From positions 124,001 to 188,000 of the forward strand of contig NW_021831286.1 of NCBI RefSeq assembly GCF_006345805.1: DNA of 64,000 nucleotides, given 5' to 3'. The notes under the pieces were generated by a model. That model saw only the letters and a program-made list of their open reading frames with translations. It was not told the DNA's origin and made no database searches. The stretch comes from Octopus sinensis. Lineage: Eukaryota. The position numbers and the translations under genes were made by a program. Every line of letters starts with the position of its first letter. Position 1 is the stretch's first letter. Positions 23,990-55,998 of this stretch are shown piece after piece.

Positions 23990-24736
23990 TTATATCCAGG
24001 GAAATGATCGAGACTGTCTGGGAATCCCCTTATCGCCCTCAGCATCCTCCAAAGGACATTTCTTCTTATGTCGCATAAACTGGAGTCTATTCTCCAAAAG
24101 TTTCTGCTCTTCTTTACATTCCTTCAATTTCTCGGTGGCAACCGCACACAACTCCTTCAACTGACACCAACGCTTATCCAATTCAACATTCCGACCAGTC
24201 AAAGGGCAGGAATCAACCTCCAATGTCCTCACCTTCAAATCCCTCAATTCTTTTCTGAGTTGTTCTATCGTGACCTCACTTTGCTTGCACTCCGAGGAGA
24301 GGAGTTGAGCTTTGTCCTCTATGTACAAATATATAAATATTTCTCACCTTCTTGTCTCAAACGAGATTGTGCTTCCAACAATTGTTGAGAAATCAACTTT
24401 ATTTGACGTTCTTTCTCGTTTGCCTGCACTTCGAATTGTTCCAACTGCACATATTTCTTGAAAAGTTACAAAAATTAGTACAATTCGGCGGGAAATGAAA
24501 GATTGGAGTAAATCACGGAGACAAATGTCGTCCTCGGACTCGACTGTCTCATTCACCTCCAAAGAAACTACAAAATAAATACAAAAACAACGAAAGGGAT
24601 GTCCGCAGAGTTCTCCTATGGCCCAAAGCGAGGGTTTTGTCGAATCAGTCCCATCGTATAGGGTGGGAAGGACATCTCCGAGCAAAGTCTGATCTTCCAT
24701 ACTCAAAAAAGAGAGACTCTCGTTAATTTGACTCAT
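23990..24736 (-). CDS. Unidentified coiled-coil protein, 3 micro-introns
   Basis: GT-AG introns 24568-24591 (24 nt), 24457-24481 (25 nt) and 24319-24347 (29 nt) join one open frame MSQINES..QLRKELRDLKV..FPWI*. Family not recognised. Confidence 0.65.
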
Positions 24737-25347
24737 AATTGACTTGGATACAGAAAAAGGAAGTAATGTTAGCAACAAGACGAGTAACTCAGGAATATTA
24801 TACAATATAATACAGAATTTAAGCCAAAACAGTCGTCGTGGGTCAGTAAGTCGAGCACACAATCCAATTCCAAAGGGGAATCCTCAAAAGCTAAAAAAAT
24901 GAATAAAGAGAGCAAACTATACTCCAAATATTTCTTCACGTATTCTTGTCTCTCGATAAGTGTCGTATTTGAGGTGGTGTTGTCACAACTGGTGAAAATA
25001 AGAATATTACATAATGTTGACTAGTCGGATAAAGACTGTATAATCACTCAGTCTGCAATGGGTGACTATGTCGACGTCAGTCAGGATAGATGCCTGTGTT
25101 TATTATCATATTGGGAATACCCAGCGGTAAAATGATTGCATTTTCTCGATGAGATTCATTAATAAATATTTTGAATGGTAGTACACACTAAACACCGCCA
25201 AACTATATATTTATAAGTGTAGTGTTTAATTAACATTAAAAAAACAAAAAGTGCGTTTGTTAAGAAAGGGTTTTTTTCGGCGACTGCAAATAATTATTGC
25301 AAAAGTTAATTAAGTCAGCTGATTTGTAGTAAATTCTGATGCCGCTT

Positions 25348-26000
25348 CTAAATCACAGAAATATCATAATCCAAAAAGTCAATTTCACAAATAATTTCAG
25401 AAGCCTGGCTGACAGTTATCCCAATGGCGTCAGTCGGGACATTACTGGATAATGGATGAGATCGCAATCTCTTTCCACTTGTGATTAAAGATCTGCAGTA
25501 AGCATCAATCTTGTTGCGGCTAGACGATTGACACCGTAGGGCTGTCTTGATGAAATTCATACAGTTGCTATCTTGACTACACCCGCTGTCTTCGTGCTGG
25601 GGGTTGGGCATACATTTTAACACATAATCGGATCTCGGCAGTTGCTAAACCCGGCTAGGTGACAAGACACGCGGAGGGTTATGTTCTTATTAAGAAATTA
25701 TAACAAGACATTGCACTATGTTAAAATGAACATTTGCTCCAACAGTAAGAATAGAGACAGTCAGTATGACCAGCCCACGAAAAATATTTCTACCAACGAT
25801 TAACACAACAAAGAATATTTTTTGGTATGAATAATGTCTTGTGGGTTGTAGAGTCCGGGGACTGTCTATTCCATTTAGTACTATCCACAAGACATCGTTA
25901 ATCCACGCCAAAACTTAAAAATGAGAAATACGGGAAAGTCGGGAGAGTGTTCCCTGTAGCCGAGGCATGAAGAATACAGAAACCTTCTACTCAAATCTGC
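25348..26000 (-). CDS. Possible unidentified gene (hydrophobic and Cys-containing segments)
   Basis: Two short same-strand ORFs in GC-elevated sequence; no consistent splice model found. Confidence 0.2.
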
Positions 26001-26175
26001 TAGGCACTGGCACTTAGTAAAACGAGTCTCGCTGGTCAGGGGTTATGCCAGGCTATCCACAAATAATAAGTTATAAATCGTAAATATTCTTTGATTTAAA
26101 AATGCAACATTTGAACAATCATAAACATGCATCCTTGGTGAAAATTTATTCAATAAAAAAATCTGAAAATCACAA

Positions 26176-28403
26176 TTAATTTTTCATCTCCACAAAAGGA
26201 CGCAGCATGTCATATTTGTTTACCAGAGAAGTACAAGCCACTATGGCCTCAAACCCTACGACTATAGTCAGTATATACCTCTTTTTCTCGCCAAAAATCG
26301 AATGGCTGCAACCTCTGACATAGCACAGCCGCCCAAAACAAACACCATCACACGTCTAGGCTTCTCGAATGTTCCAGAACGTGCTGGAAATAAATTTTAA
26401 TAAAACTCACAAAATGACTTGTATGGCAAATTACAGTCACCCGCCAATCCACTCAATTTAGAAGGATTTCGTTCATTTATTGACAAAATAAACTTAATTT
26501 ATAAACTGAAATATTTTACTTCCTCGACCAATCGATAAATGGCGGGAACATAACATCCATTAAACAAATAAGAAACATCACTCATTTCTCTCCAAAGATT
26601 TTCCTGAACATTTTTCTGTGAAGGAAGCTACTAAATAATTACGTCAACACCACCAAATTAAGTTTCTTCACTACATGATGAAATTGTGATTTGGGTTTGG
26701 TTAAATTGTTTGCAAGTCTAAAAAGAGAGTTCTTTCCTCCACTTTTGACAGAAATAAATCCCCCTCGTGATAGATTATCGAAAGTAGTCAAATGATGATA
26801 GCCGCATGTCTATTATAATAAAATATATATACTTACATGACATAGTGCTCTGACAATCGGCTCGAGTTCGGAGGCCCAAATCATCCCAGTGGACTGAGAA
26901 AGAATAACCAACAATGATAATGCAGAGTATATGTCTATCTAAAATACAATATATGAATATATAGAATAATAAACATATCTAATACTAAATGAGAACATTT
27001 CGATAGATTAGATCCTCCACATAGTCTAGTACAGCAGCCCTGTCAGCATCCTGTATTGTGGCTATTCTATTAGTATCAAACTATAACTGTGTTCGAGAGA
27101 AAAAAGAATGTCAGGCTCGATTGTGGATTGCTGAATATATTCACAAGCACTCAAATCTGAGAATTAGACTGTTTAATACGTTGAATAAGCAATCGTTGAT
27201 CTTCACGAAAAGTACCGAGATCAGAAGCCACAAATCTTCTGAGCTCTTCCAGAGAAGTGCTAGCCAGTTTACCCTTCCTATAAGACAGAATAATGACAAC
27301 CTCCATGCTGGAGGCCATCGACTTGACCTTGGACGACAAATCCAAAGTCACCTTCGAGAAATGCACATCACAAAACTCCTCAAATATCTACAAAACATAA
27401 ACCCCGGAGATAAAATAATTCCAAAAAACAAACTTTATCAGGATTACAGAAAGAAATTCTCCCAGGAATGAGATTTTTAATGTTTTTTGGGAGATCGATC
27501 ACTCCTAAGAGTAAATACACACCACAACCTTCATTCAGTCCAAAAACCTCTCCAAGAATGCCCCCATAAGTTATGTTGGAGGAGAAGGGAGTGACCAAAT
27601 CAAAAGTTCTGTCCAACAACAATAAATGTGACACTTGGGAGGTATTTAATTGTCCTTCAAAGCCTGTCTCCAACATACTCCCTACGTTCTATCCAAAATC
27701 AAATCACTCAGCCAAACCGTCGCAATCTGCCCAAAAGCATGTATTTCTGCAATATTCCCGAAAATTCCTTCGAATGTCTGTATAGCTTGAACCACGTGAG
27801 TAAGCCACAAATAAGAATTATCCTACACTGTGTAAAAGCACTCAAACCACAAAGACAGATTTGTAGAAATTGGGGAGTCCTAAACTGAGCACATCCCCGG
27901 CGATGGGGAGAAGGGAGATCATGACTGAGTGGAGAGTGACTTGTTCGAAGAGACCACTCCGACATAACAATTCCTGACATTCAAAATGCTGGAATAATAT
28001 TTTAATCTAACAATATTTGGGACGAATATAATATTGTATTCCCGCTTGATTGACTGGTTCCGATCACTTTTAATCTGGTTGATGACTTTTTGGAGGACTT
28101 GTATGTCTGACTGGAGTATATAAACGAATCAGAAATAAATTAATTGGCAATACCTAGAAGTAGAATTATTTACTATTGATCCAAGTTTGCATATTTTTAT
28201 GACTTGATATTCCTACGAATTGAGGTTAAGAAATACTTTAATTGTGCTAGCCGATATGAGAGTGTCTATTCTTCTCATCAGCGAACCGTCGATGAACAAT
28301 AATTTGGTGCCATTTATCTCAAGGATTTATATTGAATTATTACATTCATCAAGGTCCTAATTATTTCCTTTTTATATAAATGCAATAGAGGACGGAAATC
28401 CAT
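26176..28403 (-). CDS. VPS33: Sec1/Munc18-family vacuolar sorting protein VPS33, multi-exon
   Basis: Spliced reading: MDFRPLL..INGTKLLFIDGSL..EYNIIFVPN..LLPIAGDVLSL..LLLLDRTFDLVTP..TYGGIL..DVSYLFNGCYVP..VFVLGGCAMSEVAAIRFL..MKN*. Introns mostly 23-29 nt, one 58 nt. Confidence 0.92.
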
Positions 28404-29403: not shown

Positions 29404-30274
29404 ATGGTTATTCAAGGTAGAGAAAAAAGATATTGTTTCTTCAAGCTCGAACAGATTAAAAATTCAGGCTTTGTGAATAACAAATTAATATCAAATTTGT
29501 TAGCCAAATGGTTCGTTATTATATAAAACCATAGGGGCCTGTCTTTAGGGACAGAATCTTATACGTTTGACCACAGTTTTCATATAAAAGATCAACTTGA
29601 TTTTTTTTCGGTTTAATTAATTTTAACGATTAAAGGAATTTATCGAAAACGTGCCAAATATCGACATTAAAAACAGTTGTGATAAAACTAAAAACTCATT
29701 TTATAGACGAGCTTTGCATTCAAATATTAAACTGCAGCAAAACCTCTACTGAATTCTTGATCCAATCACAGAAAACAAATCAATTGTAAGGAAAAACGGA
29801 CAGATCATTCAATGCATGGAATACTATCAGAATGATTATCCAATCATCGACAAATTGAGAGAAGTTTGGATTTATTTCTATAATATAGTGTATCATAGAT
29901 TCCGATTCTCCAAACTACAAAATTTACTCTGAAGAGGATCGCAACGAATTAATTTTCTGCATTTTTAAACATCTTGTCTTAGGCGGGAACCTTTGCCAAT
30001 ATGATGAATATATCAATGAGTATATTAACTTAACTAAAATTATTTATAAAGAGCTGGTGAGGTTTTATTTTATAATTAATGATTTCAGTGTACGACGGTC
30101 TTGCGAAGAGTCTAAAAATATTGAAATCACTTCCTTAGTGTATCGGCTGTCGGTTTTTTGTTTAATAATTTAATTTATAAGAATGAGACTGATAGTAACT
30201 GCAAAGATTTCTTCTATGCAATTGTTGACCCTTCAAAAAAAATTTTAAAGACGTTCTATACTAAAAAAATTTAA
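29404..30274 (+). CDS. CFAP300: Cilia- and flagella-associated protein 300 (dynein arm assembly), 6 micro-introns, one apparent frameshift
   Basis: Hallmark EEDRNELIFCIFKHLVLGGNLCQYDE..TKIIYKELVSVR..AIVDP. Introns 29511-34, 29611-35, 29676-706, 29864-88, 30062-88, 30153-81. Confidence 0.92.
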
Positions 30275-30315
30275 ACTTTTTTTGATTATTTGTTGTCTCT
30301 ATTTTGCAAAATACT

Positions 30316-31098: not shown

Positions 31099-32830
31099 TT
31101 AATCAGAAATTAATCGGCCAGCAAGCCGGATGGAACAGCTGTTTCCACGCACAACGGCCAACAGGATCCTCTGGATTAGGAATGTAAATTCCCTAGGATC
31201 CTTGGAGCGTAATGAACAGAGGTGGCCAAGTTTCTTCAGATGATCAACTGTCTTTGTGCCAAAGACGCACGAAGTCTCAACAACAATTGGCCAAAACCAA
31301 AAGCCGTCCAACAAGCCCCGGTATTTTTCGGATTTTGTATATTCAGCCCTATTAGCACGGGACCCGGGCAGAGAGGCGGATTCGTTGATGGCCGACTTAG
31401 AGAAGGAATCAACACACGTGGCATCCCAAACTAGTGGTTTACCAGCGTCGAAAGCGAACAACGTCGAGCCATCAGGCCTTTTTCCATCACCACGGTCAAG
31501 ACCAATTGGCTCAAGGACAGAAAAATACCCTGCCTTTTCGAAGCATGGAGAATGATCTTGTTAAGAGCCGAATGACGAGGTATGCGACCTGCGCTTTTCT
31601 TGCAGGAAAGGGCATGGAGCCCGTATGTGTCCATCGTTGATCCACACCGGCAGGGGTGGGGATTACAAATCGGTAGTCCGAGACGAAGGCATATTCCAAA
31701 ACGGAGGGCATCAGAGTCGAGGCAGGTATCCAAATGGGTCGTGGGAAGGCAGTTAAGCCAGGAGCCAGAATACGGTTGGCGACTGGCACGGAAGCAAGCT
31801 AGTCTGTGCTGGTCCAAGAGACGCTCCAACGAGACAACGTAATATTCACAAATAATTTTGTCCCATTCACGTTGGAGAGATCGTTCTGACGGTAAGACGA
31901 AATGCTTTTCCTTCCAAAGCAAGAGTGCAGAATTGATATCAGAGTCCAAAGTTGATTCGGGTGATTTTTCAAGAATCTTATGGACAAGAAGATACAATCC
32001 TGAAGAAGATGAAAGGAAAGCGGGAAGAGAAAGGTCGAGCGCGGAGCGAAGCCCCAGACCGCCAGAGGATACAGGAAGTTTGGCCTGACACGAACCAACG
32101 TCATCAAACTTGACATTAAAAATCTTCTCAACGGAAGAACGCACCAGAGTGTCGAAAGAATCCAAGGCAATAGGAATAGAAAAACAGCGGGAACTCCTTA
32201 GGACATAATTGATTTTCGGGATCAGAAGATAATTTTTGAGAATGAAATAAGCAGGGTGGGGATCAATATCTGCAAGTTTATCACAAAGGGAAGAAAGGGC
32301 ATTCCTCTTGGAATTAAGAATACGAATGGCGGATTGGTCGTAGATCGGAGCACCCAAGATTTCGAGATCAGCAGTGGAAGTATGTCTCAGATCGGGCAAA
32401 AGGCCTCGAAACTGAGAAAAAATGTTTTGAAAACTAACACGATCGATGTTAACATTTACGATTTCAGATTTGAGAGAATTAATTTCGAGACCAATGGATG
32501 ACAAAGCTGGGATTAGAGATTCCAAGTCCTTTATCAAAATATCGGGCGGACCACCAATAGTACAATCATCCAAATACCAAATATTCAGAGGCGACAAATT
32601 CTTACGGGCAATAAAATCCACGGAAAGGGCAAATAATAACGGGCCCAAAAGATCGCCTTGCTGTACACCACAAGAAGAGGAAATAAAGGAATCACCTGCA
32701 GCCAAAAGGCTCGGGTATCCATATGAAAGAAAAACAAATGGCAGCAATGAAGGAATTCTGTCTTTACAAACCTCAAGTAGATGCTCTCTGTTGAGAGAAT
32801 TGAACGCATTTTGATACATTGTTTTCAAAA
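31099..32830 (-). mobile_element. CRE-clade retrotransposon, 5'-truncated within RT, one frameshift
   Basis: NAFNSL, GVQQGDLLGPLLF, WYLDDCTIGG, CRCG..HALSC, GKRPDG..WDATCVD..KSEKY..VETS..QRILLAVVRGN. Confidence 0.9.
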
Positions 32831-34976: not shown

Positions 34977-37003
34977 ATGGTTTCTGCGGTGTTCTCTTTT
35001 GTTAGACGGCCTTCTTTCTTATTGAAATGGTAATATTATGAAATAAATAATTTTAGCAATTGCCATATCTCAGACAGCCTTGCAGAAACCGACCAATTCA
35101 TATCAATTCCAATTCGTCAGAATAGGGATTCATACGCTGTTCTCAAGGCACTCTCCTCTGCCACTGAGAAAAGAACAATTGGATGTAACCACGATCTTAA
35201 ATTCCATCCTTTACGTTGTTTTGGCCCTGTTAATTTTTCCTTTCAATAATTTTAGAGGCGGCAATTAAAACTATTGGAAGCAGGGAAAAGGGTGGCCAGA
35301 TGGTACATTGACAAACATCCATACCACTTTCATTACAACCTACATAAAAATAAAGTAGTTTAGTCACTAATCAAGGCTTTCACTCCCAAAAATTTATATG
35401 ATTCTAAAAAATCGGACTTGGAAAATCTTTCGGATTCCATCGAACGAAAAAACTCTGAACGAGCTCAATATTACTATGGAGAAATAAGGAAAAATAATTT
35501 GACGATAGAAAATGAACTTTTTTCGAAATTAATGGCACTTTTGTCATTCCAAGACGATTTTAACTATGAAGAAGTAGAAAATGCTTCTGAACTGACTTAT
35601 TTCTATCTTATTCTTTCTTCGGCAAAAGTTAAGTTATTTTTGTGAAAATAGAATAACAAATTTGACAAGGTGTTGGAATATTTCTCCAAATTAGACTTAT
35701 CGAATGCAAAAGGTTGTTTTCAGTATTTATAAGAAACTTATATTTGTGAAATTTTATTTAATATTTTTATTTAGTTCCCACGGCTATCTATAACTGTTAT
35801 CTGACTGCTTTATTGAAGGATAGTTCTTCTATAAATGGAATGCTGAGCACTGCTAATGTTTGTGTCATTTATTATTGGTAGGATGTTATCAATATTATGT
35901 GGAATAATCGAGTTTGTTGTAATATAGGGACATTTAATGCAATTTTGTATAGTTTGCAGTCAATTCCATTCAAAGAAGATGAAAAATTGAAATGTGCTTT
36001 GGATTTAGCAAATCAGTTCCGAGAATTGTCGATTGGTGGCTTGTAATTAACACTATAAGTATAGATTGTTCCAGTGCTTCCACAATTACATATATTTTGA
36101 CTATTGCCGATCAAATATACGATTTATCTGCCTATAAAACAACTTGCGACAATTTAATAAAGTTTATAAACTCATTTGTGACTGTGCGTCAGTATTTGAT
36201 GACTGATCTGATGACTGGTATGTTTTTGTTAGTTATTTTGGTTTTAGATAAGTTTATAGACCTTATTTTCAGAACTGTATTTAAATTCAGTTCATTTTTA
36301 GGCTTTCAAATTGCGAGATTTGAAACTTTTAAGAACAGTATTTGATATATTCATGTTCGGGACTAACTCATATATCCCTTTCAATAAATTCGACAGGGAT
36401 TCTCAATCTTTCCCGTACTCGTTGTTGTATAAAAAGTAGATTAAAATACGCAAATGTACTCATCAATATTGCCCCGTTGGATAAGGTCGTGGATGCCTTA
36501 GCTCTTCTAAATGATAAAGTGGAGTTTTTTAGTTATTTTTAGGGAGAATTGGATCAAAGAATTGAATTTAATTTGCTAATGAGAAGAATACTTAACGAGC
36601 ACGGCCAACATTTACTTCCTCGGATTTTCAACAGTTTTTGATTTCTTGTTGATTTGTAGTTGTTGGAGGTCATGATAGACTATTAAGGACACGGACAATC
36701 GACTGCATGCAGCAAGTCGTCAACCCATCATACGAACTTAAATACAAATTTGCTGAATGTGCTGAAAAGTGCGTTTTAAGTTTGGCTGTTGGTTCTTCGA
36801 TGATAGCTCTGTTTTTATGTTTTGTTTTATTTTCAGAGACCAGCTAAAAGTGATGGAGTGCTGCATTAAATTGTTGGCTGACGGTGGAAGAACGCAATAT
36901 TTAAGGTTGGCATATCTCAATAGTTTATTTAAGTAAATTGACCAAAGTTTATATTGAAAACGGAGGAGATGCTCACATTTTGAAACGTGCAGGAGTACAA
37001 TGA
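34977..37003 (+). CDS. PTCD3: Pentatricopeptide repeat protein / mitoribosomal mS39, multi-exon; 3' end approximate
   Basis: IPIRQNRDSYAVLKALSSATE (cf. IPKK..WDKVAVLQALASTV), GKRVARWYIDKHPYHF, PPR-like NIGTFNAILYSL. Introns 21-29 nt in the modelled 5' part. Confidence 0.85.
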
Positions 37004-40189: not shown

Positions 40190-43025
40190 TCAATTTCTCC
40201 TTTTATTGTAAAAAATCTCTGCAATAAAAATCAATAGCCCGACAGAAATTCCGACTGCCACAATGATGATAAGCTCTAAAATGTATTTCTTATTGAATGC
40301 CTGTCATATTCTCTATTCCTACAGTTTCGAAATTGAAGGCATTTTCGCATGCATTTTCTCTAGAAATATATACTTGTTCTAGATATTGAATTGTTCCGTC
40401 TCTAATTATTTTAGTTTTAATAAACCATAGACATAATTTTGAATTTGATTGCTTAGTTGATTCGCCACAGGCAAGTTTTTCCTAACTCCAAAAGCTGCTT
40501 CTACTTCTCCAAATCCAGATCCTACAACAGAATATCCACATTTTCCTCTTGTCCAGTATTTTAGCTGTGATTCGTCGTGAATCAAAGCGCCGAGTTTTCT
40601 TAAACATTATAATGCTAGGGAAAACCCTGATTCCATGTCTTTGAGGACTGTCGTCATGTTATTGTACTTTGTTTTGGTCATATATGTAAACACGTGTATC
40701 AATGTTTTGTGGTATTTAAAGTAGTATGGAGCGAATCCAAATGAAAGGGTTGTAAATTCGAAATTCGGATGTGTATTTTTCTTAATCTTTTCTAATCAGT
40801 AACAGCTTTTTTACGATCAAATCTTCAACAGAAGATATAGTGGTCTGAGAGATGGCCTTTATGTAGAACGAGGCTAAATTAGCAGTGTATGAAGCTACGA
40901 TCAAAAATGAAAAAATAGCCCATGTAATTCCTAAAAATTTCCCTGAGAAACTTTTTGGGACATCTATAAATAGAGAACAGAATCAATACTTTTTGCAATC
41001 GGAATGTTTAACAAAACTCCAAGAGAAAACCAGATTGCACTGGAGATTTTAAGGTCGTTGTTGGTTTGATTTGGGGTTGTTTTTCCTTTTTTCATTCTAT
41101 TAGAATCTGGAATATAATATTGCGAGAAAGGAGAGATGCGATCAAATAAATAAAATGCAGTTGCTACAATAATAGGGCATACAAACAGAACTCCCCACAT
41201 AGTTAAACTAAATGATTGGAAGAACGAGCTAAATATTGTGTTTGAATTCTGAGTTTGTAAACTTCAAAGACTCACATCATACAATAAAATTCTATTTCTG
41301 CCCAACATGTACGGGAATGAAAAGTCAATATATTTCATTCTAAGCCTTGTTATGTGCATGGAAACGGCTGCAATGTCCGCTTTCCCGGTCGCAAGTTCTT
41401 TTACGAGGCCATACAGATAATTCTCGTTTCCAATCTAAAATGTCCATTTAATAGAAAAATACATAGTGAGGTCCAAATTGCTTGTCTCCGACAACGTAAA
41501 GTACAAATTCGAAATTTAAGTCAACGGCCAATTTATTCAAAAGTGCAACACAAAATCCCCTGCAACAATAGTTTGTCGTCAAATCTAATTTATTTCTAAA
41601 TATAATTTCACTTGTTTTTGGATCTTTCCAATCACATGGTAAAGCAGGCTTTTCACATACTTTGCTTTCAGGAATGAAGGTTTCAATAAAAGGGACTTGA
41701 TTTAATATTGTAACCTATTATTATAATAAGAGGAAAAAGCTTTTAGTTTATAAAATTCTTTAATAGAATTGAAAGGAAAAATGTGCACGTGAGGCCAAAT
41801 TATAGCAGGAAAAAACAAATCACTAGTTGAAGTCTAGTTTATAAACAATGAGCTAATTACATTATTTTTGTTAAAAATGCTTCCTACTTCTACAAGTCCT
41901 TCAGGTTGGGTATTAACTACTTTAAAATTATAATTTCGTTGATTCCCAAACGAGTCAAAATTGAGTAATTCGGAATGAAAACCAATTAAGGTTCTAAATA
42001 AGATTACTTGAGATTTACTCAAATTTGAATATTGTGTTGACTGTGTTTGCAGATTGGTCGCAAGAGACTTTTTCTCTGTTAAATCCGTTCGATTCAAATG
42101 ACGTCGTGATCATACGCAGGATTTCTTTAAACTCCATCTCTAAAATATTTTCATTTTTATAGCGAATTCCCAACATTCCTAAATAATAAAACATGAAAGA
42201 ATACCGACTGGTATCCCTTCAGCGTTAAGAGAATCTTCACAAAGAACCCAAATATACTGAGTATCTAGCAATTTAAGTTCGTTAGCAGAATTAAATATCT
42301 TTGCTGTGTCATTATGACTGAAATTTAAAAAAATGTCCAACTTTGAACATAGAAATATTATTCTCGAAAAACAATCTTCGATCGGTCTCAAAAAACTGGT
42401 GTAATTCTCCAGATTTGGAGGAAGTTTTATGAGTTTTTCAATAATTATCTAATTAAGGCTTTAATTCAAACATTTTTTTCAGTAGTTTCAATATTACGGA
42501 GTTGTTCCACAATGTGATGAGACTCGGGGTCGTCCGAATGCACAAAAATTATATATTTCCATTCAAAAAAAATACAAAAATCACGAAAAGCATTCGCCTG
42601 ATAAAAATAGGGAGAATCTGTTTGAATAAGTGGCAGATGCAATTTCTTATAATAAATACAAAAAATACATTTTTATTAAAATAGGTTTTTCGCGAATTCA
42701 TGGCGATGACGGGAATAGACAGAAATCCAGACAGTGTTTCCAACGAAGACTCGAGTACTTTACTTTTTTCATATTTATCAGTAATAATAAAATCAATTTT
42801 TAACATTTGTGCATTGTTGCAAAAATAGTCAATGGTCTCTAATGTCGAAGATTTGAGAAATATTTCTTTGATAATAATTTGAGTAATGTTTTTAAGTGCA
42901 CTAAAATTATAGTTTATAGCAATATTTTGAAGTTTTAGTATTTTTTGACTGTCTAAAACTACACCAATATTCAGAACAATTCCATTGGTGAAAAAAAATT
43001 GGAACAAAAAAAGATTCAGAAACAT
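40190..43025 (-). CDS. GRIN1: Ionotropic glutamate receptor, NMDA GluN1-like subunit, multi-exon
   Basis: ATD LNIGVVL..SGFLSIPVIAMNSR; S1 CCRGFCVALL..LATGKADIAAV..RMKYIDFSFPY; M1 YLFDRISPF; M2 SAIWFSLGVLLN; M3 IVASYTANLA; S2 LIHDES; M4 VGISVGLLIFIAEIFY. Confidence 0.9.
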
Positions 43026-45201: not shown

Positions 45202-45906
45202 AATTAAAACATAACTTATAATAATCCATGGAAATTATAAAATTACAGGGATCCTTAAAAAACAAATATTTTTAAACTACATAATAAATTAAATACAGTA
45301 AAATTTATTAATTGAGGACTCAGGGGATATTAGTAAAATAAAAATGCTTGCTACCGTCTTCTTCAAAAATCTGGAACACATAAATGAAAGTGACAAAACC
45401 AATAGGTCTAGATTTTAGAGTCAAAATAAATAATATTTGGACATTCCTTCAGGCTAAATTGCGAAACATTATGCAATCTCGCTATGGGTGAATGGAAGGC
45501 CTGCGTTATGTAGGAGGCAGAGATGCATAATATAGTAAGCTTCCAAAAAGACTATCGAATGATCACGGAAAAGCTTGAATCCGAGATGACCTACAAGATA
45601 TTCGAATGCAAGCCAGGAACAACAGGTCCTGGAAATTGAGGACAAGATGATTGTCGATTCATAACTCAAGCGGAACTCAACTCGGTTTAGGCAACGCGCC
45701 TGAGCTTTTAACTAAACAACTAACTAGAAAATTTATTCAATATTGCAAATTATCAACAACTAATTTAAGTTCATAAAATGGTCTCGGTCTATTTTTGTAG
45801 AAATTCACAAACAAATAAATTAATTAGTCAATCGATTCTCATCATTAGCTAAATACACGAATCAAAGCAAAAAAAACTGTACTTAATCAAAGATTAATTA
45901 AATCGA

Positions 45907-47575
45907 TTAGGTAGAATATTTTATGCTCAAAAAAGTTACGGCGATCTGACACGTAAGCGTAAAAAAATATGCAATAAAACATATTCTGTCTACTACCAAA
46001 GCCAGTTGTTTCCATTCGCATTTTTCATGATACAAGTTATTTTGTTTTGTTGCATTTTTAATAATTTCTTTTATGAGTGTAGAAATTTCTTGTATCTCGC
46101 TACATATTTCTTGATTTATATCATTAGCTAAATCGTTGGACTTTGAAGCAAAGTAATCATTAATTTTTTTAATTTTTTCACGTTTCTAAAATAATTAAAA
46201 ATAAAATTTTTACACGTTCCAGTGCTTCTTTGAATCTTGATTTATACTTTATAGATTCATTAGGATATTTTTTAGTTTCTTTAACCAAACTATATTGAAT
46301 TTTCTGAAAATCCAGGTTCATAAAGAGAAGCTTTTTTCCAATGAAATCAATTAATATCTATTGTTTTTAAACACGGCAGACTATTTTTAAGTAACGAGGA
46401 ATTTTTGTCTCTCTTTCACTCATATAAATATTTGAAATGATTGCGGCCAGAAAAGAAGAAAAGGCAATTGTGAACATGCTGATAGCGAAATATTCAACTT
46501 TCATGTCAAATTTACACAACTACCGATGATTGGAGTAGTCGATGTTTTGGGGATAGACTCTTCGAGAATGAGCAATAGTGCAGAAAATGCCACAAAAATA
46601 TTTATACCTATTCACGATAAGAACAAAGGGGTACCAAATATAACTTTTGCAGATGACCAGGGAGGCAACCAAAAGGTAATCATTGTTAACATGGAAAGAA
46701 GAATACATGGAAAGAGTAATTTATAGTTATAGAACTCTGACCTTCGCTGTAGTATCATTGAATATGTTAAATCAACAAATGTAGAGTTGCCACAACACGT
46801 ATAACTAATATATTAAAGCGACTGGAACCTCATGAAATGTCTATAACCAATGTTGGAAAGTATTTTCCATTGATTGTTATCTATATAACTATCCAAGTGA
46901 ATTTTATTTTCTTGATTTTTGAAATGCAAAATAATATATTTTGAATCGTACGTCCATGAGCCAAATTTCATTGAACAGTTTTGAATGTCAAATGGGAAAT
47001 ATGTCATATGCATCAAGCAATAGCTCCGATAAGTGGACGACGGATACCACTTGACTGTTCCATTATAGCTAACTGTAGCTAACGCCGGTCTTCTTTCATC
47101 CAGACGGTCGTCAGCGCTTTAATATGTAAAATAAACAAGAACATGTTGTAAAGCCGCAAATCAAGAATCCAAATATTTTCCGAGGGAATCCTCAGTGTTG
47201 TGATATTGTTGAATAATTGTGGATCCCATGTAAGAGCATAATCTGTCCATGTCTTTATATAATAAGTTCACTTATCTCACCATTTCAGTAATCATGACTG
47301 TTGTGAGGATTTGCGCATGTTCGTCGAGATCCAGAATTTGTGTTAGAAATAGATTTAGAAAAACGTGCATGACTTCTTTGGAATGCTTGACCGGCCTCCC
47401 AAGAATCCCAATTTCTTTGTAATTTCCCATTAATTTTGCTATTAACATATTTTCAGCATTTGAATTAGTCGAACTAAAGCCTGAATAATTTCACATTAAA
47501 CAAGTACTTAAAATAACTAGAAATAAATTCTTCCAATCCATACATAAAAATTGATTCGCAAATATAATTTCATTT
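45907..47575 (-). CDS. Nicotinic acetylcholine receptor alpha-type subunit, anion-selective-clade-like; first exon uncertain
   Basis: Cys-loop CLMHMTYFPFDIQNC, loop B FGSWTYD, loop C YTCC, M1 LFPCILLS..FWLPP, M2 SSAKVIFGINIFVAF, M4 EWKQLALVVDRICF. Introns 24-28 nt give an uninterrupted frame. Confidence 0.93.
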
Positions 47576-48019
47576 ATAAATAATTGGATAATTGCCTGTT
47601 AATTAACACGAGTTAAGTTCGCTCTTATCTTGTTACTGTCTGAAAGAAAACACGATTGCGCAAAAAAATTAGCTACAGTCACAAACACGACTTCTTCTTT
47701 TTAGTTGGACTTCTAATTATGCATGTCATAAAATTGTGATAAACCCTTTTAAAATACATACTACGACTGAATCAGACATTTCGGCATACAGTATTGAGGG
47801 CTATTCAATATGGCATAATAAAATGTTTTTCAACTTATGCTTTGTCATTTGTTCTAAATAACTCGTGAAGCCTCTTAAAATATAGTTAAAAATCCCACAT
47901 AAACTAAAAATATCGCATTTAAAATTGAGAATGAGTGAGACAGGCTGGCATAATAATATTTGTTAGTTTTTGTTAAAATAACAAATATTACATTATTTTT
48001 GTAGTATTTTATCACATCC

Positions 48020-48590
48020 GCTTGGGTCTTAATGTCTACTCGGGGACCAATTCCGATGTGGTAGTAAAGTCGATACCAAAGGATTACAACCCCCTATCAT
48101 GCAGAAGGAGTGCTGGCCGTGCACCTAGACACTTCGCCATCAACGAGATCATTTCGGCTGCGTTACAAACTGCTGGTTTCCCTACCGATCTGGAACCTGT
48201 TGAGTTTGGCCGCGGAGAAGGGAAACGCCCTGATTGAGTCGCCGCTTTTCCGTGGATTAATGGGAAATGCATCGCATGGGACTCTACGTGCACGGACATT
48301 TTCTCGAAGATAAATTTAGTCGACTCGGCAATCAGTCTATGATCAGCCGCTAAAAAGGCTGAAGAACTTAAAATCTCGAAATACTTTAACCTGACGGACA
48401 ACGTGATTTTTTCCCCAATCTCCGTTGAGCCATGACCAACAAATCTCTGGAACTCGTTTGGAGAATCTGGCAACTGATCTCCAGAAGACGTCGAGAGCCT
48501 CGGGAGAAGCAATAACTGTTCTAAGGAATCTCCATTGCGATCCTGAGGGCCAACGTCTTTTCGATCATTAGTAGTTTTAAACATAATTAG
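48020..48590 (+). mobile_element. CRE-clade 3' fragment, same family as 13185-15975
   Basis: Clear nucleotide similarity to 13200-13750 (shared gatgtggtagtaaagtcgataccaaagga); several stops. Confidence 0.9.
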
Positions 48591-49981: not shown

Positions 49982-51318
49982 ATGAAAATCCGCTCTGAAT
50001 TACTTTTAATATGTTATATATTCTTTCTGGTTATGATGCTTACAACTTATATTTAAGACTAGAGAAAGTCAATTTCACTATATTTTTGAAATAACTGGAT
50101 TCAAATCAAAACTTGTGGAAACCGAGAAGGGCATAAATACTCCATATACAATCTCTGTGAATTTGCGATTTCAAGACGGGAAAGACGCTGGAAGATTTTC
50201 ATCTTCTCTTCATTTGTCAGACCCGGGAGATGTTATGTCAAAAGAATTTACAGTAAGTGACACGGTATTTAAAATTTTTTTAAATAAATTAGAAATACAT
50301 CCAGCAAAATATAAGATTGTATAAAGAATCTCGGAAAGACGACAGTATTCAGTAATTTAAAATCATTTCCTAGTTTTTGAAACATCATTCTCCCATTTAT
50401 TAATTTTTGGTGAGTCTTGGAAAGTTTTTGACAACAAATATTTTATGTACAAGTTTCGCATTTTGTGCCAGCAAAAATACCTGGGAAGACATTGTAATAA
50501 ATTAAAAAATGAAGAAAAAAATCCATCATGTCCCACCGGATGGAAAGGACCCACATGCAATGAAGGTTGGTTGAGTAATTATAATTTATTTGAAGTACAT
50601 ATTAATTAGTGCACTTTTGTATATTATTTTTTTAAGATTTGAAAGTTAAATCTGAGAGTTTGCTTATTTTAGACTTAATTAATTTCCAACTCATTAGCGA
50701 TTATTTTAAAAAATAATGAGATCCACTTGTACTGCATTAGTAGTAGACAATGTCGATTTCTATAATTTTAAAAATACTATTAAAATTAATATATATTTCA
50801 AATAGCTGTCTGCAACCGAGGATGTATCCACGGAAAATGTATTGTCCCGGAAAGATGTGACTGTTATTTACATTTTGAAGGAGACAAATGTGATATATTT
50901 ATTCATCAAAACTGTATTGTATTTTGAAATTAAATTTTACATAGCAAATGATTATTGTGAAAAATATAAACCTTGTAAAAATGGAATATGTGCTAACAAC
51001 GAAATCTATAATTTCACATGCAAATGTTTTTCTGGATATTCTGGGAAAAAATGTCATTTAAAAATTGATTGTGGGGGCGAATCTTGCCCCAATTATATAC
51101 AAATTAATTTTCCTTCAATTGTGATTATAATAACTGCTCTTATTATCCTGGTCGTCTTAGTTGTGATTGTTATAATTATGAAATGTGGAGTTTTCAATTA
51201 TTTAAAAGAGCGTCCTCCGCCAAAGTACTTTCAAGTAACTAGAAACGTCGAAATATCTGAGCCAAAAACATGTATATATAATGTCATATATTTAGATATA
51301 TGTACAAATGGAATTTGA
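49982..51318 (+). CDS. Delta-like single-pass EGF protein (Notch-ligand-like)
   Basis: Signal-like N-terminus, DSL-like CQQKYLGRHC..CPTGWKGPTC, EGF CNRGCIHGKCIVPERCDC, EGF YCEKYKPCKNG..FTCKCFSGYSGKKC (cf. DLL EGF3), transmembrane helix, short tail. 5' exons not fully resolved. Confidence 0.75.
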
Positions 51319-53752: not shown

Positions 53753-53830
53753 GTTGTAGACTTTGTACTAGGTTTTGTGTTTTTTTAGTTGTAGACTTTG
53801 TACTAGGTTTTGTGGTGTTTTTTTAGTTGT
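53753..53830. repeat. Two-copy tandem repeat of about 37 bp
   Basis: gttgtagactttgtactaggttttgtg occurs twice. The minus strand reads Thr/Lys/Ser-rich (KPSTKSTTKK). Confidence 0.7.
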
Positions 53831-54736
53831 ATGTCTTGTAAAGTGGATCGCTAAAAATATTATTCATATTTTCAAATAATACCGGAGTTGTTTGAACTGG
53901 CAATCCATGGAATTTTATTATGGAGAGTTTCATTAAATTTTAAATTATGGCAATATAGAGACTGTTCTTTGGATAGTATTCGACTGCTAAAATAAGAAAA
54001 ACAGAATCAACAGTTCGCTATTATTAATAAAATTCTTCAAATCTTGACTATCCGACAGCCCTATAAAAAGCAATAATTGATAGATGATTTTTCCAAAATA
54101 TATCTACGACTATTTCACATTAAATCACTTAACATTTTTTTTTGTTTCTTGAATATTTAAATTAGTTATATTTACTGTTGGATTTGGAGAATTACTAAAT
54201 ATGTTAATTACAATATATACACTATTCTGATTGTTAAATGCTCAACTGATGAATTTGCTTCGACCTCATTAATCTTCAGTGAAGGTAGAAGGGCCTTAAT
54301 ATATAATCTAATTATTTTACATTTTCAATAATATCGATTTGATTTTCCTAAATATATTAACTTCAATACTTTCATACCGGGACATTTCCAAAGTCAATAT
54401 TCAGAACAAGATCACCTCATATATAATTTAAGTAAAAAATACCAGAAATTAAACCAAAGAAACCTATAATGAACAACATACTTCGTAGCATTAAAAGTTA
54501 ACGAAGAATTATAATTTATACCGAAAATATAGGTCAAACCCAAAATACCTAAAGAATTGTTTTTCATTTTTGCAGTTTGAGATATATGGTCACCATTTTG
54601 TGAGATATAATACACTTCTTTAAAATTTTAAGATTTTAAAGCAAAGTTATTCGTCACTACTTATGTGACCAGACAAAACGAATTGCTGAATCTTTATAGA
54701 AGGTAAACGAAATAATCAGCCATCCGCATTATATTA

Positions 54737-55336
54737 TGTCGCGAGCGCAGCGAGCGACCGAGCGCAGCGAGCGACCACTCAATTTCTAGATCCGATCAAT
54801 CAACAAATCTATAAATTGACAAATACCCAGGCTGGTATTGGGTTTAAATATATTCGATAACAAAATTTAAAATCGATGCCAAAGCAGAATGAGCTTTAAA
54901 ACCGATTTCATAATAAAAATAATATTTTAAAATTTATAATGGATATTTTAGAATAATGAGAAAAAATCTAAATGCTTCATAATTATTAAAATGTCAAAAC
55001 AAGAATTTCTGAAGGAGCAAGCCTGTCTGCACAGTTCATTTTTGATTAGAAGACCTAATTTTAGAGATTAAAACGAAAAAATAGCAATGAGATCTGTTAA
55101 ATTATTTACCCCCTCACAACCTAAACCAAATTAGCGTTCAGTATTCATTGATTTTACTTTTCTATTAAGTCTACTTATAAATTATTTTATGGGATTCAAT
55201 GGAAAACTTAAGTTATTTCAATTTTAATTTTAAATCATGTTAAATTTAAATAATTTAATAAATATATTTGTTGATGACAGGCTTGTTAGCTGTCAAAGTC
55301 GCGTCTAGCGCTCGGTCGCGCGCTGCGCTCGCGACA
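54737..55336. mobile_element. 600-bp MITE with TG..CA ends, GC-rich 29-bp TIRs and 5-bp TSD (Ginger/Tdd-like)
   Basis: TIR TGTCGCGAGCGCAGCG(A/C)GCGACCGAGCGC (28/29 match). TATTA duplicated at 54732-36 and 55337-41. AT-rich noncoding interior. Confidence 0.75.
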
Positions 55337-55550
55337 TATTATCGCTGTTAATAACTTATTTATAAAAAGAAATATCTTCCGTTGTTGAATATGTCACATA
55401 AGCCACTCGATACCTATGGCCAGTCTGTTGCATTAACCTTGAACCAAGATTACTGATTAAGTTTTTGTAATTGATATTTTTTTATTTGTTAATATAATGA
55501 ATATAAAATAATTTTATCTAATAAATAATCAGAATATCTTCTTCGTGTTG

Positions 55551-55998
55551 ATGGCCGATCGTGTAACTCAGCTGCAGGAATGCATAAACATGGTTGTTAT
55601 TTATAATCACTGTAACAAGCTGGGTGAACTATTTACGAATAGTGTAGGGATAATACAACAAACATCCAGTCCAGTTCCTTTAGACGGTTCTATCTCTCCA
55701 AAAGCATCCGAATCTGAAGATTACCCTGAACTTTATAGTAAACAGATCACACGACTTACCCACGACATAAATAATTTAATTGAATCGCTTCCACAAGAAA
55801 TAGAAATTCTTCCGCAGGTTTACCACATTAAAATGATTGTAGAATGAGAAAATCATTCAACTTGAGAAAACTAATAAAGATTTGGCTGACAAACTTCTGA
55901 TCGAATGTTCAAAGGCCGAGAACTTGCTGAACCATGTCCTTGACATTACCACGTTTATTGAAAACATTCAACTCGATAATGTCCCATATAAACTATAA
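55551..55998 (+). CDS. MED21: Mediator subunit 21, two micro-introns
   Basis: MADRVTQLQECIN..ELFTNSVGIIQ..INNLIESLP. Introns 55593-55619 (27 nt) and 55818-55842 (25 nt). Confidence 0.93.

What the first reader, a model, noticed from the sequence alone, without database searches (positions are those of the whole stretch)
23990..55998. Host genes built with 21-32 nt spliceosomal micro-introns
Conserved protein alignments fix the boundaries: CFAP300 introns are 24, 25, 31, 25, 27 and 29 nt; nAChR introns 24-28 nt; MED21 introns 27 and 25 nt. PTCD3 has two 21-nt introns (35355-35375, 35713-35733), each containing an in-frame stop, so they must be removed. This is near the lower limit known for animals and matches what is described for dicyemid mesozoans (inferred source). 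It implies a spliceosome adapted to very short substrates.
Basis: partly seen in the sequence, partly recalled or inferred. Interest (0 to 1): 0.7.

Follow-up and report, generated by a model that had tools for sequence, protein, structure and literature searches.

The report
Dicyemid-type micro-introns in animal genes
The animal genes in this window really are interrupted by tiny 21-34-base spliceosomal introns, a genuine but already published hallmark of dicyemid mesozoans, the ciliated parasites of octopus kidneys.

Summary
I rebuilt six genes between 25.3 and 56.0 kb by homology: VPS33, CFAP300, mS39/PTCD3, a GluN1-type glutamate receptor, an alpha-type nicotinic receptor and MED21. They contain 38 supported introns of 21-34 nt (median 25.5, mean 25.6 +/- 2.6). 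Thirty-six are GT-AG and two are GC-AG. Removing them gives intact ORFs that match Pfam, PDB and homologues end to end.

Three corrections:
- The PTCD3 intron at 35355-35375 could equally be 18 nt, and homology does not fix its boundaries.
- The second PTCD3 "21-nt intron" (35713-35733) is more likely the start of one 62-nt intron (35713-35774).

21-nt introns are still supported, in GluN1 and in the nAChR.

The source is most likely a dicyemid. The nAChR sits in a Spiralia-only clade. A cilia-specific gene is present, whereas myxozoans, the only other animals with such introns, lack cilia. Intron statistics match published Dicyema values.

Micro-introns in dicyemids were described in 2007, 2010, 2019 and 2026, so this is already known. 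No transcript data could be reached, so splicing itself remains inferred.

The parts
25351..28128 (-). VPS33-like (Sec1/Munc18 family) gene. The model is only partly resolved.
   Evidence: A rough spliced model hits human VPS33A (4bx9_A) at E 1.6e-16.
27505..27528 (-). VPS33 intron, 24 nt, GT-AG. Length is a multiple of 3 and there is no in-frame stop.
   Evidence: Spliced alignment to VPS33A.
27274..27300 (-). VPS33 intron, 27 nt, GT-AG. Length is a multiple of 3 and there is no in-frame stop.
27157..27179 (-). VPS33 intron, 23 nt, GT-AG.
26810..26836 (-). VPS33 intron, 27 nt, GT-AG, with an in-frame stop.
29404..30274 (+). CFAP300 gene, 236 aa, 6 introns. It also needs a frameshift at about 29757.
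   Evidence: PF14926, E 1.9e-53, profile positions 7-245 of 246 in one stretch. The model is built.
29511..29534 (+). CFAP300 intron 1, 24 nt, GT-AG, with an in-frame TAA.
   Evidence: Retaining it costs 9 bits in Pfam.
29611..29635 (+). CFAP300 intron 2, 25 nt, GT-AG.
29676..29706 (+). CFAP300 intron 3, 31 nt, GT-AG. A 28-nt alternative donor lies at 29679.
   Evidence: The alternative 96-nt intron (29676-29771) lowers the Pfam score by 18 bits.
29751..29760 (+). Frameshift site in CFAP300 (GAATTC|TT|GATCC). The reading frame has to change here, and no intron can explain it.
29864..29888 (+). CFAP300 intron 4, 25 nt, GT-AG.
30062..30088 (+). CFAP300 intron 5, 27 nt, GT-AG. Length is a multiple of 3 and there is no in-frame stop.
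   Evidence: Retaining it lowers the Pfam score from 181.8 to 167.5 bits.
30153..30181 (+). CFAP300 intron 6, 29 nt, GT-AG.
34977..36041 (+). 5' part of the mS39/PTCD3-like PPR gene. The gene continues downstream, and that part is unresolved.
   Evidence: PF22330 Rib_mS39_PPR, E 2.6e-8, 34.3 bits against a cut-off of 27. There is no direct PDB hit to mS39.
35030..35056 (+). PTCD3 intron, 27 nt, GT-AG, with an in-frame stop.
35229..35255 (+). PTCD3 intron, 27 nt, GT-AG, with in-frame stops.
35355..35375 (+). PTCD3 intron, 21 nt, GT-AG, with an in-frame TAG. An 18-nt alternative (35358-35375) fits equally well.
35628..35651 (+). PTCD3 intron, 24 nt, GT-AG, with in-frame stops.
   Evidence: The gapless PPR alignment runs across this junction.
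35713..35774 (+). PTCD3 intron, best read as a single 62-nt GT-AG intron. The alternative is 21 nt + a 12-nt exon + 29 nt.
   Evidence: The 62-nt model gives a gapless 35-residue PPR register and PPR hits in the PDB at E 1.6e-4. The micro-exon model loses all of those hits.
40190..43025 (-). GluN1-type NMDA receptor subunit gene, 825 aa, 14 introns.
   Evidence: Matches GluN1 chain 9unk_A at E 2.3e-84 as a single stretch, residues 96-823 against 85-817. Pfam finds ANF_receptor, Lig_chan-Glu_bd and Lig_chan.
42646..42668 (-). GluN1 intron, 23 nt, GT-AG.
42449..42471 (-). GluN1 intron, 23 nt, GT-AG.
42318..42341 (-). GluN1 intron, 24 nt, GT-AG. Length is a multiple of 3 and there is no in-frame stop.
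42179..42204 (-). GluN1 intron, 26 nt, GT-AG.
41994..42018 (-). GluN1 intron, 25 nt, GT-AG.
41823..41846 (-). GluN1 intron, 24 nt, GT-AG.
41715..41740 (-). GluN1 intron, 26 nt, GC-AG (non-canonical donor).
   Evidence: No GT is available at this junction, and the alignment across it to GluN1 is gapless.
41435..41462 (-). GluN1 intron, 28 nt, GT-AG.
41262..41282 (-). GluN1 intron, 21 nt, GT-AG, with an in-frame TGA. This is the 21-nt intron with the most homology support.
40964..40989 (-). GluN1 intron, 26 nt, GT-AG.
40781..40814 (-). GluN1 intron, 34 nt, GT-AG.
40599..40625 (-). GluN1 intron, 27 nt, GT-AG.
40400..40425 (-). GluN1 intron, 26 nt, GT-AG.
40276..40300 (-). GluN1 intron, 25 nt, GC-AG (non-canonical donor).
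45907..47541 (-). Alpha-type nicotinic acetylcholine receptor subunit gene, 476-477 aa, 8 introns.
   Evidence: Best homologue 348 bits at 94-100% coverage. Pfam Neur_chan_LBD positions 3-215 of 216 and Neur_chan_memb 2-227 of 233. PDB alpha-6 chain at E 9e-65.
47481..47501 (-). nAChR intron, 21 nt, GT-AG, in the signal-peptide region, with an in-frame stop.
   Evidence: (chosen with 1 of 12 references).
47253..47280 (-). nAChR intron, 28 nt, GT-AG.
   Evidence: 11 of 12 references.
47117..47142 (-). nAChR intron, 26 nt, GT-AG.
   Evidence: 12 of 12 references.
46805..46828 (-). nAChR intron, 24 nt, GT-AG.
   Evidence: 12 of 12 references.
46608..46634 (-). nAChR intron, 27 nt, GT-AG.
   Evidence: 12 of 12 references.
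46498..46520 (-). nAChR intron, 23 nt, GT-AG. A 26-nt alternative is 46498-46523.
   Evidence: 12 of 12 spiralian references give 23 nt. Human alpha-6 gives 26 nt.
46358..46381 (-). nAChR intron, 24 nt, GT-AG.
   Evidence: 11 of 12 references.
46186..46213 (-). nAChR intron, 28 nt, GT-AG, in the poorly conserved cytoplasmic loop.
   Evidence: It is needed for an intact ORF. It was chosen with 1 of 12 references.
55551..55998 (+). MED21 gene, 131 aa, 2 introns.
   Evidence: PF11221, E 5.9e-15, residues 1-117 against profile 1-140 of 144.
55593..55619 (+). MED21 intron 1, 27 nt, GT-AG. Length is a multiple of 3 and there is no in-frame stop.
   Evidence: Retaining it lowers the Pfam score from 56.3 to 41.8 bits.
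55818..55842 (+). MED21 intron 2, 25 nt, GT-AG.

Best explanation
These are ordinary nuclear protein-coding genes of a dicyemid mesozoan, or a very close relative. Their U2-type spliceosomal introns have been shortened to a narrow size class of about 21-34 nt, with a mode of 24-27 nt.

Shown here: each intron starts with GT (two start with GC) and ends with AG. The introns are AT-rich (about 24% G+C, against about 32-33% in the exons of the two receptor genes). Beyond GT plus T or A at position +3, and T or A before the AG, they carry almost no splice-site consensus. There is a weak A-rich patch 7-11 nt upstream of the AG.

Inferred: the A-rich patch is the branch site. The whole intron is recognised as one unit (intron definition) by a canonical but sterically tolerant spliceosome, in which the 5' splice site and the branch point are only about 12-18 nt apart. 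Removal restores intact, conserved reading frames. If retained, 33 of the 38 introns would stop or shift the reading frame.
For: - Thirty-eight homology-supported introns: length 21-34 nt, median 25.5, mean 25.6, sd 2.6; 36 GT-AG and 2 GC-AG.
- Spliced products are intact and full length. GluN1 is 825 aa and matches at E 2.3e-84 in a single stretch, against 153 bits in fragments for the unspliced ORF pieces. The nAChR is 476 aa, scores 348 bits, and covers 94-100% of its homologues. CFAP300 and MED21 match their Pfam profiles end to end.
- GT-AG ranks first of 256 dinucleotide pairs in summed spliced-alignment score, z = 4.8 above frequency-matched pairs. Forbidding introns drops the scores from 722, 366 and 171 to 437, 151 and 85.
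- Retaining introns that have no stop and a length divisible by 3 costs about 14 bits each in Pfam.
- If retained, 33 of 38 introns give a stop or a frameshift.
- Composition: A rises to 0.37-0.53 at positions -7 to -11, and the 5' half is T-rich.
- Source: the nAChR is sister to a Spiralia-only clade in 100 of 100 bootstraps, and all its top hits are lophotrochozoan. CFAP300 is present. The window is rich in transposons. Published Dicyema figures agree: 26.2 +/- 1.9 nt (PMC2222250); median 27 nt, 8 nAChR-like genes and 2 iGluR genes (PMC6543705); 49% repeats and 36.7% G+C (PMC6736024); a reduced GTa/AG splice signal and A residues upstream of the AG (PMC13644364).
Against: - No transcript evidence was reachable. 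The organism's sequences are not in the searchable protein or contig collections, so splicing is inferred from homology and reading frame only.
- CFAP300 carries a frameshift. That copy could be a pseudogene or an assembly error.
- For lone in-frame stops, a GT..AG bracket of 18-33 nt with a length divisible by 3 occurs by chance at 24% of positions. Single cases such as PTCD3 35355-35375 are therefore weak on their own.
- Position +3 of the 5' splice site is T (58%) more often than A (37%). The published D. japonicum logo is described as GTa.
- The species was never matched directly to a Dicyema sequence.
Confidence: 0.88

Rival explanations
1. The window comes from a myxobolid myxozoan (parasitic cnidarian), the only other animal group known to have introns under 30 nt.
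For: Myxobolids have median introns of 22-27 nt, AT-rich genomes (29% G+C) and the same reduced splice signals (PMC13644364).
Against: - The nAChR groups with Spiralia. The best cnidarian hit scores 175 bits, against 348 bits for molluscs.
- CFAP300 is a cilia and dynein-arm assembly gene, and it is present with a full-length Pfam match. Myxozoa have lost the cilium (PMC9250359).
- Myxozoan genomes are described as relatively transposon-poor, whereas this window is transposon-rich.
Confidence: 0.03
2. The window comes from an unsampled spiralian or other animal lineage that shortened its introns independently. That would be a third origin of micro-introns in animals.
For: - No direct sequence match to any dicyemid was obtained.
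- Position +3 of the 5' splice site is mostly T, not A as published for D. japonicum.
- Window G+C (about 33%) is somewhat below the published 36.7%.
Against: - Every measured feature matches published dicyemid data: intron mean and spread, the nAChR-like and ANF-type iGluR gene content, cilia genes, and LINE-rich repeats (PMC2222250, PMC6543705, PMC6736024).
- Orthonectids, the nearest candidates, have a median of 57 nt and lack iGluRs (PMC6543705).
Confidence: 0.07
3. The intervals are not introns. The genes are decayed pseudogenes, or the assembly carries errors, and the GT..AG brackets around stops and frameshifts are chance.
For: - CFAP300 does carry an unexplained frameshift.
- A lone stop can be bracketed by a GT..AG interval with a length divisible by 3 at 24% of random positions.
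Against: - All 38 interruptions have GT/GC-AG ends and lie within 21-34 nt.
- GT-AG beats all 255 other dinucleotide pairs.
- After removal, three genes read from ATG to stop with no other defect.
- The intervals are markedly more AT-rich than the exons.
Confidence: 0.01
4. The source is a protist with tiny introns (a ciliate or a nucleomorph), not an animal.
For: Paramecium (20-35 nt) and other ciliates have introns of similar size (PMC2222250, PMC13644364).
Against: - The gene set is typical of animals: a Cys-loop nAChR with the vicinal Cys pair, and GluN1 with an ANF domain.
- The standard genetic code is used, with no in-frame TAA, TAG or TGA in about 1,900 spliced codons.
- The nearest relatives are spiralian animals.
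Confidence: 0.005

Closest known systems
Micro-introns of dicyemid mesozoans (Dicyema acuticephalum, D. japonicum, Dicyema sp.; Aruga 2007 PMC2222250, Ogino 2010, Lu 2019 PMC6736024, Zverkov 2019 PMC6543705)
   Same: - Narrow length class: 26.2 +/- 1.9 nt and a median of 27 nt published, 25.6 +/- 2.6 nt here.
- High intron density, at 2-14 introns per gene.
- Reduced splice-site consensus.
- A spiralian gene set that includes nAChR-like receptors and an iGluR with an ANF domain.
- A repeat-rich, AT-rich genome.
   Different: - Position +3 of the donor is T more often than A in this small sample.
- Two of the 14 GluN1 introns use GC-AG.
- Identity with a particular Dicyema species was not tested.
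Ultra-short introns of myxobolid Myxozoa (Henneguya salminicola, Thelohanellus kitauei, Myxobolus; Hadjez 2026 PMC13644364)
   Same: Introns under 30 nt in an animal parasite, a GT(a)...AG-only consensus, and weak A residues upstream of the AG.
   Different: These are cnidarians, not spiralians. They have no cilia and so would not be expected to keep CFAP300. Their medians reach 22 nt, and they carry fewer transposons.
Tiny introns of ciliates (Paramecium 20-35 nt; Stentor 15-16 nt)
   Same: A similar size class, and by inference the same reliance on intron definition with a very short distance from the 5' splice site to the branch point.
   Different: Ciliates are protists, and many use reassigned stop codons. 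This window uses the standard code. Introns with no stop and a length divisible by 3 make up 5 of the 38 here. My rough expectation for no selection against them is about 14% (an estimate from base composition, not a tool result).

Membership tests
U2-type (GT-AG) spliceosomal introns | GT (rarely GC) at the 5' end and AG at the 3' end | tested here: met
   36 GT-AG and 2 GC-AG among 38 introns. GT-AG ranks first of 256 dinucleotide pairs.
U2-type (GT-AG) spliceosomal introns | The intron interrupts a coding sequence, and its removal restores a continuous conserved reading frame | tested here: met
   Intact ORFs of 825, 476 and 131 aa. Single-stretch matches to GluN1, to nAChR homologues and to Pfam Med21 and CFAP300.
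U2-type (GT-AG) spliceosomal introns | A branch-point adenosine and a pyrimidine tract upstream of the 3' splice site | tested here: inconclusive
   A is enriched at -7 to -11 (0.37-0.53) and T is about 0.47-0.61 at -3 to -6. No defined motif emerges from 38 introns.
U2-type (GT-AG) spliceosomal introns | The intron is absent from mature mRNA | not testable with these tools
Dicyemid genome | Intron length distribution centred at about 26-27 nt with a small spread | tested here: met
   Mean 25.6, sd 2.6, median 25.5, against 26.2 +/- 1.9 (PMC2222250) and a median of 27 (PMC6543705).
Dicyemid genome | Spiralian phylogenetic affinity of the proteins | tested here: met
   The top named nAChR hits are all molluscs or a brachiopod, followed by rotifers. 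The sister group is Spiralia-only in 100 of 100 NJ bootstraps. This rests on one gene family and a distance method.
Dicyemid genome | Motile-cilia gene set retained | tested here: met
   CFAP300 gives a full-length Pfam match at E 1.9e-53, although this copy has one frameshift.
Dicyemid genome | nAChR-like Cys-loop receptors and an iGluR with an ANF_receptor domain, despite the absence of neurons | tested here: met
   compared with the inventory of 8 nAChR-like and 2 iGluR genes in Dicyema sp. (PMC6543705).
Dicyemid genome | Nucleotide identity to a sequenced Dicyema assembly | not testable with these tools
   No eukaryotic genome collection is available. A window ORF is not on record.
Myxobolid myxozoan genome | Cnidarian affinity of the proteins and absence of cilia genes | tested here: not met
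   Cnidarian nAChRs score 171-175 bits, against 348 bits for molluscs. CFAP300 is present. Myxozoa lack cilia (PMC9250359).
mS39/PTCD3 (identity of the gene that holds the claimed 21-nt introns) | Match to the mS39 PPR profile or to solved mS39 chains | tested here: inconclusive
   PF22330 at 34.3 bits against a cut-off of 27, covering only profile positions 43-138 of 194. No PDB mS39 chain matches at E <= 1. Only designer PPR proteins match, at E 1.6e-4.

The most novel reading that the evidence does not exclude
The source is not a described dicyemid. It is an independent, unsampled lineage with micro-introns, whose splice-site usage has drifted further than reported: GTT-dominant donors and about 5% GC-AG. 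That would imply 5' splice-site recognition almost independent of U1 base-pairing.
Probability: 0.07. Interest if true: 0.55.

Novelty: already known. Interest (0 to 1): 0.25.

Why it matters
Introns of 21-34 nt are close to the physical minimum for a spliceosome. They matter for two reasons: for understanding the minimal requirements of splicing, and in practice for gene finders and read mappers, whose default minimum intron sizes miss them.

The phenomenon is already documented for dicyemids, first by cDNA-genome comparison in 2007 and then by genome and RNA-seq work in 2019 and 2026. This window therefore adds a clean worked example, not a new principle. Its use here is as an annotation key. 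With it, six genes in the window can be read, and the source can be assigned with good confidence.

Tried and rejected
- Ab initio chaining of ORFs through any GT..AG of 15-100 nt or 18-45 nt. It produced long spurious chains, on the reversed control sequence too, so I dropped it in favour of homology-guided spliced alignment (script).
- Protein database search with the spliced CFAP300: no hit, because of the tool's word-seeding limit.
- Exact look-up of the 867-aa window ORF: not on record.
- PDB search with the rough PTCD3 model: nothing at E <= 1.
- Pfam scoring of PTCD3 splice variants: could not separate the 21-nt, 18-nt and retained versions, or the 62-nt model from the 21+29 model.
- VPS33 spliced alignment to human VPS33A, with and without GC donors. 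Homology is too weak in places, giving spurious long introns and frameshifts. Only four junctions were kept.
- Codon-usage log-odds for a small gene finder: only 0.16 bits per codon, so not pursued.
- Dinucleotide scan on single loci. GT-AG ranked first for the nAChR, but AT-rich pairs scored higher for GluN1. Only the summed, frequency-matched comparison is decisive.
- A GT/GC-AG solution for the CFAP300 frameshift was looked for by hand on the sequence: none exists.
- Rfam and tRNA scans: nothing found.
- Peptide search in the supplement of Zverkov 2019: nothing found.
- Contig context of relatives of the reverse-transcriptase ORF: marine metagenome contigs, uninformative.

Full report
**What the window is.** The 64-kb window is AT-rich DNA (about 30-36% G+C, with one island at 48.6%). 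It has no rRNA, tRNA or Rfam family. It is full of short ORF fragments in changing frames, plus long transposon ORFs:
- LINE-type reverse transcriptases at 949-2292(-), 13334-15937(-) and 31431-32828(-);
- pogo/Tc5-type DDE transposases at 21956-22838(+) and 59464-60817(-);
- a hAT element at 56285-58149(-).

**Method.** Ab initio chaining of ORFs through arbitrary GT..AG intervals drifted, even on a reversed control sequence. I therefore wrote a protein-to-genome spliced aligner. It allows introns of 15-120 nt in any phase, and it also allows frameshifts. I drove it with reference proteins that the tools returned: PDB chains, and the database homologues. Genes without usable references were modelled by hand on the three-frame display and tested against Pfam.

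**CFAP300 (29404-30274, +).** The spliced 236-aa product matches Pfam CFAP300 over profile positions 7-245 of 246 in one stretch (E 1.9e-53, 181.8 bits).
- Retaining the 27-nt intron, which has no stop and a length divisible by 3, lowers the score to 167.5 bits. Retaining intron 1 lowers it to 172.5 bits.
No GT- or GC-AG interval can do that.
- A 96-nt intron (29676-29771) would give an intact ORF. It scores only 163.5 bits and splits the match in two. The frameshifted exon is therefore real, and the shift is an assembly error, a polymorphism or a lesion.

**MED21 (55551-55998, +).** The introns are 27 nt (55593-55619) and 25 nt (55818-55842), as claimed. The 131-aa product matches PF11221 from position 1 (56.3 bits). 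Retaining the stop-free 27-nt intron drops the score to 41.8 bits.

**nAChR (45907-47541, -).** Eight introns give an intact ORF of 476-477 aa with a signal peptide, the Cys-loop and the vicinal Cys pair of alpha subunits.
- The product matches 500-510-aa lophotrochozoan receptors at 348 bits, 36-37% identity and 94-100% coverage. It covers Pfam Neur_chan_LBD positions 3-215 of 216 and Neur_chan_memb 2-227 of 233.
- With 12 different reference proteins the aligner chose the same junctions. Four were chosen 12 of 12 times: 47117-47142 (26 nt), 46805-28 (24), 46608-34 (27) and 46498-520 (23). Two were chosen 11 of 12 times: 47253-80 (28) and 46358-81 (24).
- Human alpha-6 prefers 26 nt over 23 nt at 46498.
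- The 28-nt intron in the cytoplasmic loop and the 21-nt intron in the signal peptide rest mainly on ORF integrity.

**GluN1-type receptor (40190-43025, -).** It is the richest case: 14 introns of 23, 23, 24, 26, 25, 24, 26, 28, 21, 26, 34, 27, 26 and 25 nt give an intact 825-aa ORF.
- The product aligns to GluN1 chains as one stretch, residues 96-823 against 85-817 (E 2.3e-84, 287 bits). The unspliced ORF pieces gave 153 bits in fragments.
- Two junctions have no GT available and use GC-AG: 41715-41740 and 40276-40300. The alignment across both is gapless.
- The gene contains a 21-nt intron supported by homology, 41262-41282, which holds an in-frame TGA.

**mS39/PTCD3 (from 34977, +).** The identification is supported only modestly. 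PF22330 scores 34.3 bits against a cut-off of 27, over half the profile. No solved mS39 chain matches at E <= 1.
- The first claimed 21-nt intron (35355-35375) is GT..AG and holds an in-frame TAG. A donor 3 nt downstream gives an equally valid 18-nt intron. Pfam scores are 34.3 bits (21 nt), 35.7 (18 nt) and 36.8 (retained), so homology does not fix this boundary.
- A random codon in this window is bracketed by a GT..AG interval of 18-33 nt with a length divisible by 3 in 24% of trials, and by exactly 21 nt in 4.3%. On its own this case is weak. It is credible only in the context of the other introns.
- The second claimed 21-nt intron (35713-35733) has an in-frame TAA. Treating it as a separate intron requires a 12-nt exon and then a 29-nt intron (35746-35774).
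- One 62-nt intron (35713-35774) gives the same frame. With it, the protein aligns gaplessly to the canonical 35-residue PPR repeat of designer PPR proteins (11 PDB chains, best E 1.6e-4). With the micro-exon model every PPR hit disappears. I therefore read it as one 62-nt intron.

**VPS33 (25351-28128, -).** A rough model hits human VPS33A at E 1.6e-16. Homology is too weak for a full model, and I kept four junctions of 24, 27, 23 and 27 nt.

**Is it more than chance?**
- Across three test loci with 14 junctions, requiring GT...AG gave the highest summed alignment score of all 256 donor/acceptor dinucleotide pairs (1259).
- GT x AG is 5-8 times rarer in this sequence than the AT-rich pairs that came closest.
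- Against the 163 pairs of comparable frequency, the mean is 920, the sd 70 and the maximum 1104, so z = 4.8.
- With no dinucleotide constraint at all, the gaps are still 24-33 nt. With introns forbidden, the scores fall to 437, 151 and 85.

**Properties of the 38 supported introns.**
- Length 21-34 nt, median 25.5, mean 25.6, sd 2.6. Modes are 27 nt (8 introns) and 24 nt (7).
- Phases 0/1/2 number 18/10/10. Eighteen have a length divisible by 3. Thirteen of those contain in-frame stops and five do not. In all, 33 of 38 would stop or shift translation if retained.
- Pooled intron G+C is about 24%. Exon G+C is about 32-33% in the two receptor genes, with 18-27% in the introns of individual genes.
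- At the 5' end only GT plus T (58%) or A (37%) at +3 stands out. At the 3' end only T or A before the AG stands out.
- A rises to 0.37-0.53 at -7 to -11, which is +15 to +20 from the 5' end. The 5' half is T-rich.
[quoted passage not shown] The exception is that T exceeds A at +3 in my small sample.

**Mechanism.** Shown: the boundaries, the size class, the restoration of the reading frame and the compositional contrast. Inferred: canonical U2-type splicing by intron definition, with the A-rich patch as branch site only about 12-18 nt from the 5' splice site. Recognition would depend on the terminal dinucleotides, on length and on AT-richness, not on extended consensus pairing. Hadjez et al. 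report conserved U2 snRNA and U2AF in myxozoans and argue for a conventional spliceosome (PMC13644364). Nothing in this window bears directly on the spliceosome itself.

**Source organism.** Among animals, introns under 30 nt are known only from dicyemids and myxobolid myxozoans (PMC13644364). Several lines favour a dicyemid:
- All 14 best named hits of the nAChR are bivalves or a brachiopod, followed by rotifers. The best cnidarian hit scores half as much.
- In an NJ tree of 32 sequences, the window protein is sister to a Spiralia-only clade in 100 of 100 bootstraps.
- CFAP300 is a cilia gene. Myxozoa have lost the cilium (PMC9250359), while dicyemids are covered with cilia (PMC6736024).
- Dicyema sp. 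encodes eight nAChR-like receptors and two iGluRs, one of them with an ANF_receptor domain (PMC6543705). The same kinds of gene occur here.
- The D. japonicum genome is 36.7% G+C and 49% repeats, with many LINE copies (PMC6736024).
- The nearest named relatives of the GC-rich reverse-transcriptase ORF are in Octopus sinensis (51% identity). This fits a link with cephalopods but does not prove one.

I could not test direct identity with a Dicyema assembly.

**Novelty and verdict.** Very short, uniform introns in Dicyema were shown by cDNA-genome comparison in 2007 (26.2 +/- 1.9 nt; PMC2222250). They were surveyed in 40 genes in 2010 (Ogino et al., cited in PMC6543705), confirmed genome-wide with RNA-seq in 2019 (PMC6736024, PMC6543705) and compared across animals in 2026 (PMC13644364). 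The corrections that add something are:
- the probable 62-nt PTCD3 intron;
- the 18/21-nt ambiguity in PTCD3;
- the CFAP300 frameshift;
- the two GC-AG micro-introns;
- the better-supported 21-nt intron in GluN1.

Noticed in passing
window 29751-29760: CFAP300 needs a -1/+2 frameshift (GAATTC|TT|GATCC) between two exon segments that both match the Pfam profile. No GT/GC-AG intron can explain it. It is an assembly error, a heterozygous indel or a recent lesion.
   Followed up: yes
window 41715-41740 and 40276-40300 (- strand): Two of the 14 introns of the GluN1-like gene use GC-AG instead of GT-AG (26 and 25 nt). Both junctions align gaplessly to GluN1. Two of 38 is above the roughly 1% usual in eukaryotes (a figure from general knowledge), but the sample is small.
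   Followed up: partly
window 13334-15937 (-), partial copy about 47977-48590: An intact 867-aa reverse-transcriptase ORF lies in a 48.6% G+C island within a genome of about 32% G+C. Its best named relatives are Octopus sinensis proteins (51% identity, 69% coverage). The best unnamed relatives come from marine metagenomes (48% identity). Octopus is the host of Dicyema, so transposon exchange between host and parasite is conceivable, but at this divergence it would not be recent.
   Followed up: partly
38 introns listed under parts: Donor position +3 is T in 58% and A in 37% of introns, whereas the published logo for D. japonicum is described as GTa. This may be sampling noise or a difference between species.
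   Followed up: no
window 35734-35745: A possible 12-nt micro-exon (AAACTTATATTT) lies between a 21-nt and a 29-nt GT-AG interval in the PTCD3-like gene. The PPR repeat register argues against it and for one 62-nt intron.
   Followed up: yes
window 40190-47541 (- strand): Intact genes for an NMDA-type GluN1 subunit and an alpha-type nicotinic receptor lie within 8 kb of each other, separated by a RING-finger gene (44085-45234). The likely source organism has no recognisable neurons.
   Followed up: partly
window 949-2292, 21956-22838, 31431-32828, 56285-58149, 59464-60817: The transposon load is heavy: LINE reverse transcriptases, pogo/Tc5 DDE transposases and a hAT element. Several have long open frames, which fits the roughly 49% repeat content reported for D. 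japonicum.
   Followed up: partly
window 50037-51315 (+): ORFs with weak DSL (E 0.007) and EGF (E 0.001) matches are followed by a hydrophobic stretch that looks like a transmembrane segment (judged by eye). This may be a Delta/Serrate-like Notch ligand gene. I did not model it.
   Followed up: no
window 23732-25020 (-): A gene at the left edge of the finding has no Pfam match in my rough model. Its identity and introns are unresolved.
   Followed up: no
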